Assembly: GCF_003704095.1 (NCBI RefSeq)
Contig: NW_020845300.1
Coordinates: forward strand, 248,001 to 312,000
Direction of reading: 5' to 3'
DNA length: 64,000 nt
Source: Pocillopora damicornis
Taxonomy: Eukaryota
Position 1 is the stretch's first letter. Every line of letters begins with the position of its first letter. Shown piece by piece: positions 4,199-44,187 of the stretch. The notes beneath the pieces were generated by a model that was given only the letters and a program-made list of their open reading frames with translations, did no database searches and was not told the DNA's origin. Both the position numbers and the translations under genes were made by a program.

Positions 4199-6261
4199 GT
4201 TAGAGATTGGGTAAAGTCTATGTTACAGTTGTACGCCTGGTTGCCAAGCCTTTTCACAGGAGTGAGGCAAGGGGTGACCTTGTTATGATATAAACCTTGC
4301 CTTATTATTACGCGAACTAAATGCTGGTCTCTATCACAACATGGTCACCTTCAGCCTCGCTCCAAATCAAAGGCTTTGCAACTAAGTACACAACTGTGAA
4401 ATGGCCTATTTATAGCCTAGCGTCATTTCGCCTGCTTGTCAGCTACGTTTCTTAGACACTGTACCGCTGACAATTAACCCTGAACTCAACATTCGCTTTT
4501 TTTTCTTCAAGTTTTTTTTTTATCTATTTATCAACTTGGCTAAGGTTCTACTTTAATTTTTCGACGAGTATTAAGAACAATGCAGTTAAATACAGGAGAT
4601 ATCAATTTAGTCCACGGTCTGTTTGGTCCTTGTAAGCAATGGGCTGCGGCTATATCAACCAGAGAGTTTGGTGAGATTTTTCCAGCAGCTGCCTTCGGGT
4701 AAATTCAGATATGGAAAATTGTGAAAAGAAAGTAATAGAATAACAAATGAAATAAATGATGATGATAATAATAACATAAAAAGAGAGAAAAATATCAATG
4801 ATGTCTNNNNNNNNNNNNNNNNNNNNNNNNNNNNNNNNNNNNNNNNNNNNNNNNNNNNNNNNNNNNNNNNNNNNNNNNNNNNNNNNNNNNNNNNNNNNNN
4901 NNNNNNNNNNNNNNNNNNNNNNNNNNNNNNNNNNNNNNNNNNNNNNNNNNNNNNNNNNNNNNNNNNNNNNNNNNNNNNNNNNNNNNNNNNNNNNNNNNNN
5001 NNNNNNNNNNNNNNNNNNNNNNNNNNNNNNNNNNNNNNNNNNNNNNNNNNNNNNNNNNNNNNNNNNNNNNNNNNNNNNNNNNNNNNNNNNNNNNNNNNNN
5101 NNNNNNNNNNNNNNNNNNNNNNNNNNNNNNNNNNNNNNNNNNNNNNNNNNNNNNNNNNNNNNNNNNNNNNNNNNNNNNNNNNNNNNNNNNNNNNNNNNNN
5201 NNNNNNNNNNNNNNNNNNNNNNNNNNNNNNNNNNNNNNNNNNNNNNNNNNNNNNNNNNNNNNNNNNNNNNNNNNNNNNNNNNNNNNNNNNNNNNNNNNNN
5301 NNNNNNNNNNNNNNNNNNNNNNNNNNNNNNNNNNNNNNNNNNNNNNNNTGCAATCGAGCGTTTCCGTTCATTAACAAAGGAAATGAATCATACAAAGAAC
5401 TGGTGGAGGCAACATAAAAGCAAATGTCGCAATGGCGGACGACCTCATTAGCCGGGGCTCGATAAACACTACGATTCGGACATTTTTCAAAAAGCTAACA
5501 AGTGCGTGCATTAGGAAACTGATCCTCGCCGGGTATCACGCATTTTTACCTTTGTGGACGCATTTATTATATAAAAATATTTTCTGTTGCTTTATGGTCA
5601 CTTTTCACCAAACGCGGTATTCATTTGGTGGATAAATCATCAAAGGGTTGTAACGTGCGCGGCTGTCCTGATACACGAAAGGAACATTACACATTTCCCT
5701 TTCGCGTATAAAACGTACCACCCACATATGTGTATGTTTGCACCAAAATTACATGTAAATCCTTTACCAATAGGTATAGATATACGTTATAACACTGTGA
5801 GGCAAGAGGCTTTACCGAGAATGGACACAGGGCAGTGTCTTTTGTTATTCCATACAATAACTATCAAAATTCTCTCGTGCTCGTTATCCATCTTCTTTTT
5901 TTAATAATGAGACAGACATAAACAACGTCACGCAGATCTTCCCGCAAAATTTCGTCGATATCGCATGGTAGCATTGTCAAATAAAGCAGTTAGGCATGGG
6001 TTTTTACAAAACATAAGACATCAACAGTCACTTCCAATGAAGGCTGATGCATTCACGCGCGGGAAACATTTTGTGCATCATGTATGCTCATGTGAAATGT
6101 CCTGCAGTTTTCCGTAACACTTACACAAAACATTTAGCTCTAGATGCGTGTCCGCTGAATACCATAATACTCCTCCGCTAGGCTATTCATTCTAAACATT
6201 GTTGTGAAAATCTTCGATCTAAATTCTTCTCGATAAGGTGAGAGGGAATACAATATTAAGA

Positions 6262-11070: not shown

Positions 11071-12586
11071 NNNNNNNNNNNCGAAGTTGGATACAGCTCA
11101 TTGTATGTCTTGACAGACATCTCAACGCCTACTAGTCACAAAACGCTTTGGATTAGATAAACGATGGAATATCCCACGAGTCACTTGGACATCTTTGGTG
11201 TACCCAGAAGATTTCAGTCGAGTGTGTATTATGACTATTATGACCCCCTCTAAATGACTAGAGGGACATTCCGAAGTGTGCCTCGAAAAAGTATTTCAAA
11301 ACTGTTTTATACCATTCCAAAAAAAGATGAAATAAAACAAATGCCAACACCATCAATAAGGCATACGCGTAGATTTAATTCTGAACTAGCCCCTTACTGT
11401 ATCCTGTTTAAAACACTAAAAACACTAAAACTGAATATTCATCACATAAAAAGAAAACAGAGTGCTTAGCAAATTTTTAAGTTGTCAAGGTTGAACGCCG
11501 AGAACAAACCGGAAATGACACTAGTTTCAAAATGTAAACGGTCAAAAGATAGCAGACAACGATGGGAAGGTTGGAAGATACATCGGTGTTTCTGTATTCT
11601 GACTGGCTGCATTTTGTATGGCGTAGTAAAGAAAAGACTATTGTTAAAAAACAAAACTTCATTAAGGCTGCCTGTTGGAGATTTTGCACGAAATGCTTTT
11701 AGAAAAAATTGACCATATTTTCGCGTGTCTCGATCCTGTCGATAATGGAACTGTTTCTTTTCGCAGCGAAGGCTATAGAAACTTAATGTATCTCCAACTA
11801 CAGTGCAAAAAAAATGTTTAGCAAACGGTGGACCGACAGCGCCAGGCCCATTAAAACACGGTTGATCGAATGAAACAAGTATCTCCGATTATTAATCCAC
11901 CGAGTCCTCTATTCATCCCTATATTCACTGCCGCTTTTCGAGATTGTGATGCGAGAGTTTTCACCGCAAGATAACCCTTATTTTCGACGATGTTCACAAA
12001 AAGCCGCGAAGGTTCCAAGTCGACAAACTAGCTTAGAGCCTTGCGTACTTAAATTGCATTCGCATGTCTCCCCAACCCACGACATCAATGACTTCAATAA
12101 ACAAAAAGCTTTAAAGAGCGGCACACGTCTAGGTAATTTTGTCCACAGGGGTACATGAGACCACCTTGCCTACTGGTAGGATTGAGTCATGATACTCGTA
12201 AACATCCGGTAACAATGGACCATTAAAAACAACTCTCATTCAAGTAATTTTGCCCGTAGGAAATTTGCACGGAAGGAAAATATATTTTTCGTGTCGCCCA
12301 TGGAATTGTTTATTCTCGTAGGCGAAGTTAAAGTGATTCCTTCCCCGTTTAGTTGCAATTTCATATAATCGCCAGCTATAGGTGCAGAACTGGGTATTAA
12401 CCGGCAGTGATCATGCAATGAGCGAATGTTTTCTGTCACACTCCAAGTGGCATTTTTGACAGATTGAACAGTATATAACGTTAATGTTCTTCTATATCTG
12501 GGACATGGACCTCTTCAGACTGCTGCACAGATATTTAAATTCATTCACTCCCTCGTTGGGCCGCCGTATTTCATAAAAATTTTGCT

Positions 12587-32501: not shown

Positions 32502-33050
32502 ATGGACCCAGACGAGGACTCTCGTCGAGAGGAACAAAATTATGAAACATCAATGTTTGGAACTTGTTCAGGCGAGAGCGAAGATATTGAGAAAGAGACG
32601 GCGTTTCCACATACAAAGGTTAACAATGAAAGATCGAGCAATCAGAGCAATTCCGCGAACCAAAAAAGACGATTATTTAAAGGAAGTCTGAAGCTTTCTA
32701 AACAAAGATGGATAAGCATGAACCACGACACACCGACGAGGAAAAACAGAGTTCTAAAGTCTGAGAGATCAATGGATGACGCGGTGCTGCAAGGAAGCCG
32801 GCAAAGCGATTCGCCTTGCAGCCAAAGTTCCGAATCCCAAGAGAAGAACGATAGAACAGAGCTTGACTGTGGAAGGAGTTTGGATAGCGTGCCCGAAGGT
32901 TATCGAAATTCTTTTAGTGATGTTCTATCAAGAAGAGGAAGTATTTGTGAGGAGATAGAAAAGGAGATCGTCCAGGGTGGAATTAGTTTGCACAAGATGC
33001 GTAAGTCACTAGTGATTGAACAAACCCTCAAGGATCGATTTCTTATGTGA
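32502..33050 (+). CDS. Uncharacterised 182-aa protein with polar N-terminus and conserved C-terminal RRGSIC module (paralog of 41632-42012)
   Basis: ATG-initiated ORF. Its last 39 aa align without gaps to the last 39 aa of the ORF at 41632 (17 identities), and both stop at the same position. Confidence 0.75.
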   Translation: MDPDEDSRREEQNYETSMFGTCSGESEDIEKETAFPHTKVNNERSSNQSNSANQKRRLFKGSLKLSKQRWISMNHDTPTRKNRVLKSERSMDDAVLQGSRQSDSPCSQSSESQEKNDRTELDCGRSLDSVPEGYRNSFSDVLSRRGSICEEIEKEIVQGGISLHKMRKSLVIEQTLKDRFLM

Positions 33051-34678
33051 TAATGTGATATGTAACTTGACTGCGTAAAATCATGCAGAAAAGCTATGGT
33101 TACAGTCTGCATTTTTTTGTTTAATTTTTTTCACTGAGTGTCTTTTAATCATTTTTTCTCTCTTTAGCATGGACAAAGGGGAATCCTGTGTGCTTCGTAA
33201 AACTTCCCCCGAAACCCATTGTATATTCACTTTAAGGTTTTGAATAAGTCGCGATAAGCTGCTCTCATTTCATCAATTTTGATTCATATACATTTTTAGA
33301 ACTTTTAATAAGAATCTCCAATGGGGTTTCTTACCTTTCAGATGTTATTGGCCCCTTGCAGATGGGAAGTGACAAGGCGATAATATTTCACTGTGTTATC
33401 TATTCTTGACGTTTCTAATCTGATAACGGTGTCAGAAGTCTGAAGGAGTAGTGCAATAAACGAGACAGTTTTGAAATATATGCCCCCGCTTATCTTGCCA
33501 ATTTCGGCTTCCCACGCACCTCAAAAACAAAAACAAAGCTGGTTGAAGGTAATTGATCATAAAAACAGAACGATCAGGCATCTTTTGCAAAAACAGAGCC
33601 TTAAATTTCAGTTCCCAGGAAAAGATTCGGTTACAAGTAACATTATGGCCTTCAAGGTTAAAAATGAATTTTTGAAGAACGTAATAAACAAGACTGTGAA
33701 GCCGGCCAAGGTATTCTCAAATTGAAATACACTTGATTGTTAATGTTTTGAGGCCTTGAGCCGAAGCAATTCATTTGTTTAATCTAAATGGTAATATTGA
33801 AAAACAAAAGTCCTCCCGTCTGAGTTTGTATTGATACGTCCAATCCGAAAGTCTAATCAAAATTAGTCGCAATTCAAAGCCTTTGAGCGCGTTTCAGAAA
33901 AGTCTTAACAAAAATAGTAAAAAAATGCCCTTGATTGACAGATAAATGATACAGGGAACCGGGACGAATGGGGAAACATTTAGAAAACATAGTAATAATA
34001 TGTAATAATTTGAAATCATTTCGATTGAGCGTCATAAAATAAGAGCAAAATAATCACGACAGTTAGACAGAGAAACAAATCTGCTATCAACTGCTATTTA
34101 CTTGAACGAGGAAACAGAACAATTTTTTTTCGGCAAATATCTCTCAACCAACCCACGTTCCCCCGTCCCACCTTCCTCCGCCTCCTCTTCATTTGAGGTT
34201 ACAGTAAAGTGATCGTGAAGTCATATACGTGATCTTATCGTTGCAAGAATTTTGGTGATAGGCAAATGGTAAATCACCAACAAGTCTGATCGGAATGGGT
34301 CTAGACCCCCCAGACCTTTACACTGGATCCGAACAGTACGTTTTTCTTTCTAAAGTATAAGGAAGACTTAACTTGCGTTTTTAAGCATGTTCAGCCCAGT
34401 CTAGATGGGGTCTTACATATTAGCTTCCATTCTGCAAAGATGGCATTTCGCTAAGGCTCTGACTAGACGCAGTAATGTATTAACGAGAGACCAAATGAGC
34501 TCAAGTACAGAGTTTAATAAATGCTTTTACACTTTTCTAACCTAGAGACTCTTTTCATGTGACAGTTGATAAATAGCTATAAAATTCCCATTTCAAAACA
34601 TTTCAATTCTGCCTTGACTATTTTTCCCGGCATTTATAGCCACACCGGCTAAAATTCTTTGCTTCGCAAATATCTTTT

Positions 34679-40671
<5,993 letters not shown>

Positions 40672-41631
40672 AATCTAGACAATATTTCCTTTGTTTACCG
40701 TACGAACTTCCTTTAGGCTCGTACAGAACCCTTTCCCAAGATGGGGTCAATTCAGGAGGTCAAGTTGATGATTTGAAAAAGTGGATCACTCATCGTGATC
40801 ACATGTAACAAGACTACCTTTACTTTCTTTGCATCCTGCTGCTCACGTGATATTCATGAACCACATGACTTTCCAAAGCAGCCAAGAAGCTAGGCCATTC
40901 ATGACGCCTGCCCAAGAAGAACCGATATACTTCAAAGAAATCAATTCTATGCTGGCTGTTTCTGTTATTATGTTTGAAAAGTCCATTGAGGAAAAAGAGT
41001 GAAAGCAGAACAAACGAAACAAAACAACTCGAGTTTGCATCACTTGGCATATTGCCGAGTCGCCTCAGTCTCCTAACAGAACTCTGTTACTACGGTTGAA
41101 TGAGATGCCTGCTTAGTTTTAACGCAAAAAAATCGAGAAAACAAAAAAAAAAAGGAATGGAAAGAAAAAAAGGAAAAAAAATAAAAAGGGAAATGGAAAT
41201 CTGAACGTGTTCCAACCCTAAGTTGTAATTAAATTATCGACACGTTCACAAGGGCTCGCTCTACTTCTCTTAAAGACAGTACAGTACAGAGAGCTCGAAA
41301 CAACAATGGTGAAACAGGCATGCTTCAGATTTAGCCTCACCATTTTATTCTCCTTTTCCTTTTATATTACTTTTCTTTCGGATTTTCATAACTTTTGTAC
41401 ACTTTGACCAAATTATTTCAAACGCAGCCCGTCATCGTAGGAGGGTCGGTTTGCTCCTTTAAATTTATGATGGTCTTGAAAACGTGTGTTATCTACAAAA
41501 AATTTATTCACAAAAGAGAAATAACGATCTTGGTCATTATTACTTTTAGAACTAGGGCTTTTAAACTTGCATTATTGCAATATCACATTTGTGTCGGAGA
41601 GAGAGCCATTCGTTTGCAAGTACTTCTCTCT

Positions 41632-42012
41632 CTAGATGAGATTCCAGTTCGATAGATTAACGTCAACAATGAGATCTCCCCTCATAGATCTTAGCTTCCC
41701 GCCAGTTTGCACGATACACTTATCTATCTCATCACAAATTGCGTTTCTTCGCGTTTTTAAAGCGCCTGTTCTGTACGTATACGCATTAGCATTTGATCTG
41801 GCTACAGTAAGGCTATCCTCTTCGAAGATTTCCTCCCTCGATTTCCCATTTAGATGGCTTATGGACTTCACTACAGTTCTTTGTTTGAAGGTTTCTGACA
41901 AAGAGCAATGGATTTCTTGTGCTTTGGACGCAATTTTCATCATGTAGGAGAACATAGAGGCATTATTTTTTTTGTTTACTGCGTTCTTAGCCTTGTAGTG
42001 GTCACCTTCCAT
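41632..42012 (-). CDS. Uncharacterised ~126-aa protein with C-terminal RRNAIC module (paralog of 32502-33050)
   Basis: First ATG at 42012; the tracked start at 42108 is a TTG inside a probable intron (42130-42058). Shares the 39-aa C-terminal module with the ORF at 32502. Confidence 0.72.
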   Translation of the reverse strand: MEGDHYKAKNAVNKKNNASMFSYMMKIASKAQEIHCSLSETFKQRTVVKSISHLNGKSREEIFEEDSLTVARSNANAYTYRTGALKTRRNAICDEIDKCIVQTGGKLRSMRGDLIVDVNLSNWNLI

Positions 42013-43602
42013 GCAGTTGACATCGTATTGATTGAGGTCAAAAATGTATTGCGATTTCTTTGGACAAAGTTTAAGGTAGCAAAAGGGTTGAATTAGTTTT
42101 GAAGTCAACGTTATTACAGGATTTTCTTACCTAGTCTTTCAAAAAGCATTCTTTGGCTTTCGAAATTGCCTTTTGAAAAAGTTTATCTCCTTTCATGTTG
42201 TGCGCTCGATTGAAAGTCACATTTGTTGGTTGCTTTCAGAATCATCATTGCATGGCATCTGTGCCAATGATGACTTTAAAGGTGACTAAAACTTTTGATA
42301 ATAAATATATTGAATGCATTTGTCTAAGGAAGTGATAATATATTTTTTTCGCATATATGGAGTTTATTTCAATTAGCATCTAACAAATGATAGTTCTAAT
42401 AGAGATCATCATCTTTGGAATAGAGACTTCTAGGGTTTGGAATACTAACTAGCATAGCTTTCTACGCGTCTTGATGAAACCAGCTTAAGGCCTAGGATGA
42501 AACTATGATCTCCGCTGTTTCAAAAAAGCTACGTTGAAATTTTATGCCGCTCTTTAAAAAGTAAAAAACAAACAAACAAAAAAAAAACAGAGAAGTACAT
42601 ACATGTAACAACACTGTCGTCCACAAATAAAAAATATAAAAAAAACTTTGCGGTCGATATTTCTCCTTCAATATATTATTTTTGCCGGATGCATGCAGGA
42701 ATAGCCTCTGGCTTGAATAGCACAATCTGACGCGGTTTATACAATTATATTGTAACCAATCACAGTTGAGCGAATAATCCAGAATTCTTGATGCGGAAGT
42801 TTGAATTTTTACCATAATCGATTTTTTTGAGGATGTTGTGGCTTCACACACATCAGCACTAAAAAAACACCACTATAGTATTTGTCGCGTTTGTTTGAAT
42901 CAATTAGCAGCGTAAACTAATGTTAAAACGAAATCATACTTTCACGTGGCATTATCCTTCTGCTTGCAGGTAATTTACCTCAGTGAACCCGTTTGCTTAC
43001 TAGAGGTGATTAAGTTCATTGAAAATAGACATAAAAGCCGATCTAACTTTTCAGCTCAGTTGTCGAACAGAATAGAGAAAGTTGTACAGCATTTGGAATG
43101 AGAGTGAAAAAAGAGAAAAATCTCGGTCCCTTGTGAAGTATTGAAACTCAGACCTTCGCGTTTGGCTGTCCAAGGCTACACTATTACCCTACTACTACTC
43201 CCTCGATCCGAGTATTTCTAGCCCAAGCCGAGCCATGACAGTACTGCAAAAAAAGATCACTCTGTGACTCCGAGGTCTGCGTGCTTCTCTTTGTGAATAG
43301 TGCTTGATCTTGTTTGCATCGCCTACAAAACACAAACTCCTGAGGATAAGGATATAATGCATGTCATTACAAGGGCAAGCCAGATTTTCCTTAAATATTT
43401 TCGAGTCCTAAGTGTTAGTTCTGTATGGGGCACAAACCCTTGACCTTCTTCAAGATGGTAGCTCGCACTCTCCTACAATAATAGTGGATATCCATTCGGC
43501 TGTACGACTTCAATGCCATACAAACCAGCAATCTTAAAAAAAGTGCTCGATTTAAATGCAAGAATATGCAAAAACTTATGATGATGTTAAGAAACCGAGA
43601 GT

Positions 43603-43919
43603 TCAAGTGCATTCAACGCTTGGGCCCTTACTATGAGAGCAGCCACAATCTCCCTGTCTCCACCCATTGTGTGAACATTGACTTAAATCTAGCTCTCCTC
43701 CCTGGCATCTGACTTCATCCGTCCAGACACCACCAGACCCTTGACGGTACGCATTTCGCTCTGGGATGAGCAGAAGCAGTTGCACGGGAGAAACCCAAAT
43801 CACGACGTACTACATTGGCGTCGGTGATATCCCGGTTATCGTCGTACACCGTTCCCCACCGCCCGCTGTAAAAAATATCTCCACCCACCAATAGGCTGCT
43901 CCGTTATTCACCAAACGAA
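43603..43919 (-). pseudogene. Decayed scavenger receptor cysteine-rich (SRCR) domain exon
   Basis: Reads [30 protein letters not shown]../..[35 protein letters not shown] with two frameshifts. The conserved Cys of WGTVC and VVCR are replaced. No partner exons found. Confidence 0.8.
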
Positions 43920-43977: not shown

Positions 43978-44187
43978 TTAACCCTTTAACTCTCAAGATC
44001 TCATTAGTAATTCTTCTTACTGTCTGCCATACTGTTCTTGTGATGTTATTTTGGAGAATTTGGTACTGAATCAACTTGTTCCCCTAATTGATATTTTTCG
44101 TTATTCTCATTACTTGAATGCTTGGTATTGTATTTATATTGTTAAGAGAAATTCTGTCTTGGTCACTCATGAGACTTAGAGGGTTAA
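43978..44187. mobile_element. piggyBac-type MITE (best preserved copy)
   Basis: TTAA-CCCTTTAACTCTCA ... TGAGACTTAGAGGG-TTAA, ~200 bp, non-coding. Confidence 0.8.

What the first reader, a model, noticed from the sequence alone, without database searches (positions are those of the whole stretch)
32502..42012. Orphan small-protein pair carrying a PKA pseudosubstrate/substrate module: candidate new family of PKA inhibitors
Seen: ORFs 32502-33050 (+) and 42012-41632 (-) show no obvious similarity except a gapless terminal 39-aa block, RRGSICEEIEKEIVQGGISLHKMRKSLVIEQTLKDRFLM* versus RRNAICDEIDKCIVQTGGKLRSMRGDLIVDVNLSNWNLI* (17/39 identical, stops in register; coordinates 32931-33050 and 41751-41632). 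Established: RRNAI is the inhibitory pseudosubstrate of PKI (GRRNAIHD), and R-R-x-S-hydrophobic-C is the pattern of the PKA RII inhibitory site (RRVSVC), whose P+2 Cys can cross-link to the catalytic subunit. The RRNAI paralog also has Tyr at P-11, where PKI has its high-affinity Phe, but lacks the P-6 Arg. Inference: a lineage-specific family of mostly disordered PKA (or PKG) regulators, one non-phosphorylatable and one phospho-switchable, possibly redox-sensitive, with a helical tail for dimerisation or anchoring.
Basis: partly seen in the sequence, partly recalled or inferred. Interest (0 to 1): 0.85.

Follow-up and report, generated by a model that had tools for sequence, protein, structure and literature searches.

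The report
Coral gene family with PKA-like decoy motif
The two small coral genes are real members of an unannotated sea-anemone/coral gene family (at least 14 copies in this genome) whose conserved 40-residue tail begins with a sequence that looks exactly like the site by which known inhibitors plug protein kinase A, but whether they actually bind that kinase could not be tested here.

Summary
Both ORFs exist at the stated coordinates, and their last 39-40 residues align without gaps (17 identities, E 2e-8). The assembly gaps lie more than 3 kb from either ORF.

The pair is not an orphan pair. This genome holds at least 14 paralogs. A profile search finds 90 clusters of small proteins that carry the block at their extreme C-terminus. 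Every named member is a hexacoral or a sea anemone. No Pfam family, PDB sequence or known fold matches.

In 115 distinct blocks:
- RR is invariant.
- The next-but-one residue is Ala, Ser or Gly in 114.
- The following residue is Ile, Val or Thr in all.
- Cys, Glu+6, Gly, Leu and Arg are near-invariant.

AlphaFold2 folds the block as a confident helical hairpin behind a disordered N-terminus.

The motif fits the published PKA substrate/inhibitor consensus and resembles the inhibitor sites of the PKA regulatory subunits. It is not a PKI homolog: the coral has a separate canonical PKI gene.

Kinase binding was not testable, so the pseudosubstrate reading stays a hypothesis (about 0.4).

ORF2's ancestral 5' end is broken in this genome.

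Another first-stage note in this genome (s1-763598) had probably flagged a paralog.

The parts
32502..33050 (+). ORF1 (subfamily F1), 182 aa plus stop, single coding exon. It is the form with Ser at the P0 position.
   Evidence: Translation. There are 35 homologs, including NCBI models from Stylophora and Oculina. Ka/Ks against the ortholog in L034 is 0.27.
32931..33047 (+). ORF1 C-terminal block of 39 aa. RR is at 32931-32936, Ser147 at 32940-32942 and Cys149 at 32946-32948.
   Evidence: The block is invariant in 22 orthologs. Block Ka/Ks is 0.05-0.11. AlphaFold2 gives a helical hairpin with pLDDT above 90 for the last 30 residues.
32739..32780 (+). ORF1 mid-protein conserved basic/acidic motif, residues 80-93.
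   Evidence: K81, N82, V84, L85 and K86 are invariant in the F1 alignment. A similar stretch occurs in ORF2 orthologs.
41632..42012 (-). ORF2 (subfamily F2) as read from its internal Met: 126 aa plus stop. It is the form with Ala at the P0 position.
   Evidence: Translation. Orthologs of 182-186 aa are listed. Ka/Ks against L034 is 0.225.
41635..41751 (-). ORF2 C-terminal block of 39 aa. RR is at 41751-41746, Ala91 at 41742-40 and Cys93 at 41736-34.
   Evidence: Block Ka/Ks is 0.086.
42074..42196 (-). Remnant of the ancestral F2 N-terminus. It lies in another frame, carries an in-frame TAG at 42133-42131, and is followed by a frameshift.
   Evidence: tblastn of ortholog P0039 residues 1-38 gives 58% identity here. 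RNA contigs over 42034-42200 show no change at the TAG.
41384..42200 (-). Stretch covered by low-depth contigs from RNA libraries. It is the candidate ORF2 transcript. No splice joint was seen.
   Evidence: Contigs in 4 of 4 RNA runs from 2 studies lie here, at depth 2-5, while 40936-41380 (three of the four runs) and 42272-42900 (all four) are empty. An AATAAA signal lies at 41349 on the minus strand.

Best explanation
ORF1 and ORF2 are ancient neighbouring paralogs of an unannotated anthozoan multigene family. Each member has a variable, disordered N-terminal body and an approximately 40-residue domain at the extreme C-terminus.

The domain reads R-R-x-[A/S/G]-[I/V/T]-C-[E/D]-E-hydrophobic-E-[K/R], then a Gly turn, then a basic amphipathic helix with invariant Leu, Arg and Leu. 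This much is shown.

The rest is inferred. The N-terminal edge of the domain would dock in the active-site cleft of a cyclic-nucleotide-dependent AGC kinase, most likely the PKA catalytic subunit. The Ala and Gly forms (ORF2 and most paralogs) would act as non-phosphorylatable decoys. The Ser forms (ORF1 and its orthologs) would be substrates released on phosphorylation. The hairpin would supply extra contacts, localisation or export. The invariant P+2 Cys would lie close to the kinase's activation-loop Cys199.
For: The family is real.
- Orthologs occur in many anthozoans.
- The profile search finds 90 clusters.
- This genome holds at least 14 paralogs.
- Purifying selection is strongest on the block.
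- F1 and F2 are adjacent in three other assemblies.

The motif fits a kinase site.
- RR is present in 115 of 115 blocks. P0 is A, S or G in 114. P+1 is I or V in 106 and T in 9, never L, M or F.
- This fits the published PKA-C consensus R-R-X-S/(A/G)-hydrophobic (PMC5059767).
- It also fits the features used to define the Smoothened PKI motif.
- 81 of 115 blocks fit RR.[ASG][IV][CS].E. This is the pattern of the RII inhibitor sites bound in PKA-C crystal structures and of the RI-alpha site.
- PKA-C Cys199 contacts the substrate P+1 residue (PMC8146537).
- No other known domain explains the block.
Against: - No binding test was possible. PKA-C is split into small exons here.
- AlphaFold2 places RR and P0 to P+10 inside helix 1 of a hairpin. 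P+1, P+5 and P+9 form its hydrophobic stripe, helix 1 is acidic (mean charge -2.0) and helix 2 is basic (+2.4). Packing alone could therefore explain the small P0, the beta-branched P+1 and the invariant Glu/Arg.
- The fixed 39-41-residue distance from RR to the C-terminus suggests a self-contained fold.
- P0 switches among A, G, S and C repeatedly, even within subfamilies.
- The PKI high-affinity determinants (P-6 Arg, P-11 aromatic) are not family features.
- The coral already has a canonical PKI.
- A short motif picked out by a large scan carries a strong look-elsewhere risk.
Confidence: 0.4

Rival explanations
1. The block is a kinase-independent helical-hairpin interaction or sensor domain. 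It would be a small folded module that binds some other partner, or uses the invariant Cys-Glu-Arg set for redox or metal chemistry. RR would serve that partner or pair with the C-terminal end. The resemblance to PKA sites would be coincidental.
For: - AlphaFold2 gives a confident hairpin (mean pLDDT 84, above 90 for residues 21-51) with RR inside helix 1.
- The hydrophobic stripe lies at P+1, P+5 and P+9, and the two helices carry complementary charges.
- S, T or N at the N-cap of helix 2, an invariant Gly turn and a fixed distance to the C-terminus are all typical of a fold.
- P0 behaves as a generic small residue with repeated switches.
- About five chance hits of the 8-residue pattern are expected per proteome (my estimate from residue frequencies).
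Against: - It gives no reason why an absolutely invariant RR should sit exactly three and two residues before the small residue.
- It does not explain why P+1 excludes Leu, Met and Phe when P+5 and P+9 accept them.
- No partner or fold relative was found.
- The homodimer test gave no verdict.
Confidence: 0.4
2. The family consists of highly diverged true homologs of PKI (PF02827). They would have kept the pseudosubstrate and the downstream leucine-rich export signal.
For: - ORF2 carries RRNAI, and its subfamily has Tyr at P-11.
- A pattern of the form hydrophobic-xx-hydrophobic-xxx-hydrophobic-x-hydrophobic starts 19-20 residues after the first Arg in 71 of 115 blocks. The coral PKI has hydrophobic residues at about the same offsets (read by eye).
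Against: - Pfam PKI does not hit any member.
- The PKI model searched over the whole genome finds only two other loci.
- hhalign gives probability 2% and does not even align the RR motifs.
- The GRTG core, the P-6 Arg and the N-terminal helix are absent.
- The invariant Arg inside the putative export helix is not a known feature of export signals.
Confidence: 0.04
3. The proteins are shuttling or adaptor proteins whose conserved tail is chiefly a CRM1 nuclear export signal or a sorting signal. RR would be part of a basic localisation patch.
For: - The export-signal-like spacing occurs in 71 of 115 blocks.
- Basic stretches occur in the bodies of the proteins.
- The proteins end in LL, LI or LM.
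Against: - Export-signal patterns are very degenerate, and 44 of 115 blocks do not fit.
- This reading does not explain the invariant Cys, Glu or Gly, or the small P0.
Confidence: 0.08
4. One or both ORFs are not functional genes. For ORF2 this would mean a decaying pseudogene in this genus.
For: - ORF2's ancestral 5' part has a stop and a frameshift.
- RNA depth is only 2-5.
- One low-depth RNA contig carries a change that would turn the P0 Ala into Val.
Against: - The frame stays open for 164 codons.
- Block Ka/Ks is 0.086.
- All family invariants are kept.
- A near-identical ORF recurs in 116 member sequences.
- ORF1 is clearly under purifying selection and is annotated in two other corals.
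Confidence: 0.15

Closest known systems
Inhibitor (autoinhibitory) sites of the PKA regulatory subunits RI and RII
   Same: They share the 8-residue pattern R-R-x-[S/A]-[I/V]-[C/S]-x-E, and both include Ser (substrate) and Ala/Gly (pseudosubstrate) forms. RII has Cys at P+2, like this family.
   Different: The family has no cyclic-nucleotide-binding domain and no docking/dimerisation domain (Pfam finds nothing). P+3 is acidic instead of Ala. The site is followed directly by a helical hairpin that ends the protein.
PKI, the heat-stable protein kinase inhibitor (PF02827)
   Same: Both are small and mostly disordered. Both carry RRxA followed by a beta-branched residue. ORF2 even has RRNAI. A leucine-rich helix lies about 19-20 residues downstream.
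   Different: There is no detectable homology. The GRTG core, the P-6 Arg and the N-terminal Phe helix are missing. The family has its own invariant Cys, Glu, Gly and Arg. The coral encodes a separate canonical PKI at G000:C2336.
Non-homologous PKA-C pseudosubstrates found by motif: ARHGAP36 (RRGAV) and the Smoothened PKI motif
   Same: These are precedents for unrelated proteins that use R-R-x-A-[I/V] to block PKA-C. In both, conservation of the motif among orthologs was the first clue.
   Different: Those cases were proven by peptide arrays, calorimetry or surface plasmon resonance, and kinase assays. Nothing of that kind exists for this family. Those motifs also sit in loops of large proteins, not in a terminal hairpin domain.

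Membership tests
PKI (Pfam PF02827) | Significant match to the family profile | tested here: not met
   No PKI hit for ORF1, ORF2 or 29 other members even at E up to 1-10. The PKI model run over the whole genome finds only C2336 (49 bits) and C1122 (18 bits), and none of the family loci. hhalign against the coral PKIs gives probability 2%.
PKI (Pfam PF02827) | Arg at P-6 and an aromatic residue at P-11 in an N-terminal helix (the high-affinity determinants) | tested here: not met
   P-6 is Arg in 14 of 120 blocks. P-11 is Tyr in 15 of 120, essentially the ORF2 subfamily only. The coral's own PKI has both.
PKA-C substrate/pseudosubstrate motif class (R-R-X-S/(A/G)-hydrophobic; PMC5059767) | Arg at P-3 and P-2 | tested here: met
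   115 of 115 distinct blocks. Invariant in the 14 paralogs of this genome.
PKA-C substrate/pseudosubstrate motif class (R-R-X-S/(A/G)-hydrophobic; PMC5059767) | Ser (substrate) or Ala/Gly (pseudosubstrate) at P0, and a hydrophobic residue at P+1 | tested here: met
   P0 is A 78, S 23, G 13, C 1. P+1 is I 81, V 25, T 9.
PKA-C substrate/pseudosubstrate motif class (R-R-X-S/(A/G)-hydrophobic; PMC5059767) | ATP-dependent, RR-dependent binding to PKA-C and inhibition of it, or phosphorylation of the Ser form | not testable with these tools
   AGC kinase genes in this genome are split into exons of 38-174 codons. The searches that could have fetched a full-length PKA-C had already been used. No complex with PKA-C could be predicted.
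PKA regulatory subunit family | Cyclic-nucleotide-binding domains and an RIIa docking/dimerisation domain | tested here: not met
   No Pfam domain in any of 41 members scanned.
Leucine-rich (CRM1) nuclear export signal | The spacing hydrophobic-xx-hydrophobic-xxx-hydrophobic-x-hydrophobic in an accessible helix | tested here: inconclusive
   The pattern is present at a fixed offset in 71 of 115 blocks.
Polycystin-2 C-terminal EF-hand region | Sequence similarity to the helix-loop-helix of PDB entry 2KLD | tested here: not met
   A 3-sequence profile gave E 0.2. A 14-paralog profile gives no PDB hit at E up to 10.

The most novel reading that the evidence does not exclude
Anthozoans carry an expanded class of PKA (or PKG) catalytic-subunit decoys that is not homologous to PKI, with at least 14 genes per coral genome. 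Their docking site is built into a terminal helical hairpin. Paralogs toggle between pseudosubstrate (Ala or Gly) and phospho-releasable (Ser) forms. The invariant P+2 Cys can form a redox-dependent disulfide latch with the kinase's Cys199, and the second helix acts as an export or targeting signal. This would be a new layer of cAMP-signal control in animals in which cAMP/PKA is tied to symbiosis, calcification and stress responses.
Probability: 0.15. Interest if true: 0.85.

Novelty: new variant of a known kind. Interest (0 to 1): 0.58.

Why it matters
If the tails do bind PKA-C, this would be a fourth independent invention of a PKA pseudosubstrate, after the R subunits, PKI, and ARHGAP36/Smoothened. 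It would be the first to exist as a diversified multigene family with matched substrate and pseudosubstrate paralogs. It would give coral and sea-anemone biologists a set of candidate local regulators of cAMP signalling, and biochemists a compact new inhibitor scaffold with a possibly redox-active Cys.

Even if the kinase idea fails, the work defines a previously unannotated, strongly conserved 40-residue domain. At present its members are labelled only 'uncharacterized protein' in cnidarian genomes.

Tried and rejected
- **Polycystin-2 EF-hand similarity.** The hit (E 0.2) disappeared with a richer profile.
- **PKI homology.** Rejected by Pfam, the whole-genome PKI search and hhalign.
- **Fold searches of the hairpin model.** Foldseek found nothing. 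VIA-align gave only generic hairpins with Z at or below 4.7.
- **Homodimer prediction of the block** (complex prediction, two copies). The result was 'no answer', score 0.01, with an uncertain fold and controls not run. It is not evidence either way.
- **ESM Atlas.** No usable hit for the ORF1 tail. Only sub-threshold rows (0.78) for P0096.
- **Getting PKA-C in one piece.** AGC-kinase C-terminal exons lie in open frames of 38-174 codons.
- **Domain fusions in the longer paralogs.** None found.
- **Prohormone reading** (RR as a dibasic cleavage site). Rejected by reading the sequences: the N-termini are hydrophilic with no signal peptide, and there is only one Cys.
- **Taxon of the unnamed distant subfamilies.** Three cluster look-ups and several contig look-ups gave no names beyond Nematostella, Actinostola, Stylophora and Oculina.
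- **Literature search** for the NCBI locus names and for cnidarian pseudosubstrates. Nothing found.
- **ORF1 transcription.** Not checked.
Full report
**Observation.**
ORF1 (32502-33050, +) encodes 182 residues, and ORF2 (42012-41632, -) encodes 126 residues, exactly as quoted. BLASTP finds a single gapless alignment of the last 40 residues: 17 identities, E 2e-8 for the pair, running to both stop codons. The window's N runs are at 4807-5348, 11071-11081, 36266-36365 and 38278-38534. None lies within 3 kb of either ORF, so continuity and frame inside each ORF are not in question. Only the spacing between the ORFs is uncertain.

**Both are real genes of a coral.**
The assembly has 234 Mb in 4393 contigs.
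- ORF1 has 35 homologs. They include NCBI models from Stylophora pistillata (78% identity) and Oculina patagonica, both named 'uncharacterized protein'.
- In 22 aligned orthologs, with overall identity as low as 37%, the tail is almost invariant. It includes RRGSICEE.
- ORF2 has full-length orthologs of 182-186 residues that keep RR[N/K]AICDE and the rest of the tail.
- Ka/Ks against a coral of another genus is 0.27 for ORF1 (0.11 in the block) and 0.225 for ORF2 (0.086 in the block).
- In three other anthozoan assemblies the two genes lie 2-5 kb apart. They are therefore old tandem duplicates. In this window a copy of an AGXT-like gene sits between them.

**ORF2 is damaged at its 5' end.**
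The segment homologous to the orthologs' first 38 residues lies at 42196-42074 in a different frame. It contains an in-frame TAG at 42133-42131 and needs a frameshift to join the rest. Contigs from four RNA libraries of two studies cover 41384-42200 at depth 2-5. The flank 42272-42900 is empty in all four runs and 40936-41380 in three of the four. The contigs show no change at the TAG and no splice joint. ORF1 transcription was not checked.

**It is a family, not a pair.**
- A third paralog of about 400 residues lies on contig C2304 and has its own orthologs, which carry RR[S/T]AVCD.
- A profile of the block finds 14 loci in this genome. In each, the block ends an open frame of 95-412 codons. 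Clusters lie on C2304 (three loci), C2122 (two) and C33 (two).
- A profile search of 1.84 billion representative proteins gives 90 hits at E up to 0.001. Almost all are 70-250 residues long with the block at the very end.
- The only named members are from Nematostella, Actinostola, Stylophora and Oculina.
- Two distant subfamilies have only block-level similarity in this genome, so they come from other, unidentified taxa.

**Anatomy of the block.**
In 115 distinct blocks:

| Position | Residues |
|---|---|
| P-3, P-2 | R, R in 115 |
| P0 | A 78, S 23, G 13, C 1 |
| P+1 | I 81, V 25, T 9; never L, M or F |
| P+2 | C 114 |
| P+3 | E or D 106 |
| P+4 | E 89 |
| P+5 | I, L or M |
| P+6 | E 114 |
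| P+7 | K or R 111 |
| Turn | G 109 |
| Helix 2 N-cap | S, T or N |
| Helix 2 | L 114, R 115, L 111 |

In most blocks, RR lies 39-41 residues from the C-terminus. Upstream positions, including P-6 and P-11, are not conserved across the family.

AlphaFold2 on the full ORF1 gives no structure for residues 1-146 and two C-terminal helices. On the block alone, with 14 paralogs as the alignment, it gives a confident helical hairpin: mean pLDDT 84, above 90 for residues 21-51, with helix 3-24, a tight turn, and helix 32-47. Helix 1 is acidic (mean charge -2.0) and the start of helix 2 is basic (+2.4).

**Comparison with known families.**
- No Pfam family matches any of 41 members scanned.
- A weak PDB sequence hit to the polycystin-2 EF-hand region (E 0.2 with three sequences) vanished with the 14-paralog profile.
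- Foldseek finds nothing, and VIA-align finds only generic hairpins with Z at or below 4.7.
- The coral has a canonical PKI gene at G000:C2336:248721-248921. It scores 49 bits against PF02827, has the GRTGRRNA core with Phe at P-11 and Arg at P-6, and matches PKI-alpha chain 3WYG_D. A weaker second PKI-like ORF lies on C1122.
- The PKI model does not hit the new family, and hhalign gives probability 2%. The family is therefore not PKI.

**Mechanism.**
The invariant edge of the block fits the published PKA-C substrate/inhibitor consensus R-R-X-S/(A/G)-hydrophobic (PMC5059767). It also has the features used to recognise the Smoothened PKI motif.

81 of 115 blocks fit RR.[ASG][IV][CS].E. This is the pattern of the RII-alpha and RII-beta segments seen in PKA-C crystal structures and of the RI-alpha site. 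Every natural PKA pseudosubstrate known to me has Ile or Val at P+1 (own knowledge). The family's exclusion of Leu, Met and Phe at that one hydrophobic position fits this. PKA-C Cys199 contacts the P+1 residue of substrates (PMC8146537), so a P+2 Cys would lie near it. The old RII Cys97-Cys199 cross-link is cited from memory only.

Against this stands the hairpin model. It puts RR and P0 to P+10 in a helix, and P+1, P+5 and P+9 form its hydrophobic stripe. The small P0, the Glu/Arg invariants and the fixed distance to the C-terminus can all be read as packing constraints.

P0 also switches repeatedly among A, G, S and C, even between tandem paralogs. Either reading allows this.

A homodimer job gave no verdict.

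I put the kinase-docking reading at about 0.4. A kinase-independent hairpin domain is also at about 0.4, and the remainder goes to minor rivals.

**Verdict.**
The interpretation passes its own conservation, no-known-domain and transcription tests. It remains untested at its core, and some PKI-specific details do not generalise.

The solid result is a new, unannotated anthozoan domain family. The PKA-decoy idea is a well-motivated hypothesis that can be tested directly.

A separate first-stage note in this genome (s1-763598, a 156-aa 'PKI analogue') has the same length as paralog L014, so the scan has probably met this family before.

Noticed in passing
window 43978-44187: An interspersed repeat of about 210 bp. 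The whole-genome first look found about 3900 candidate copies at 86-90% identity. It piles up to depths of 80,000-120,000 in RNA-library contigs. There is no Rfam match. It looks like a SINE or MITE.
   Followed up: partly
G000:C2336:248721-248921 (-) = L032:1495-1728; G000:C1122:168137-168289 (+) = L033:1459-1662: A canonical 77-aa PKI gene (PF02827, 49 bits; Phe at P-11, Arg at P-6, GRTGRRNA core) and a weaker second PKI-like 67-aa ORF with GRTGRRGA. This coral therefore has bona fide PKI.
   Followed up: partly
G000:C2304:52830-62898; C2122:6139-11842; C33:153196-155665: Tandem clusters of paralogs of the same family: three, two and two genes. The sister genes on C33 differ at P0 (Ala against Gly).
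   Followed up: partly
window 41741 (ORF2 codon 91, the P0 Ala): One low-depth RNA contig (run X2) reads G>A on the + strand, which would change the P0 Ala to Val. A second contig (X3) has several changes and indels here. These may be errors, another species, or relaxed constraint on this truncated gene.
   Followed up: no
proteins P0017, P0021, P0023, P0025, P0027 (ORF1 orthologs from other samples): In one lineage the stop after the terminal Met is replaced by Trp, and the frame runs on for 8 to about 130 unconserved residues. In that lineage the block is not at the extreme C-terminus.
   Followed up: no
window 40120-40671 (-) and 43603-43891 (-): The first coding exon of an AGXT-like aminotransferase, heavily covered in RNA libraries (depth about 460-580), and an SRCR-domain exon. 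SRCR followed by the F2 gene is conserved in two other corals, but the AGXT copy between F2 and F1 is not.
   Followed up: partly
window 32871-33047 / 41635-41811 compared with PDB 2KLD: By eye there is a similarity between the ORF2 tail and the first helix-loop-helix of the polycystin-2 C-terminal EF-hand region (E 0.2). It is not supported by the richer family profile.
   Followed up: yes
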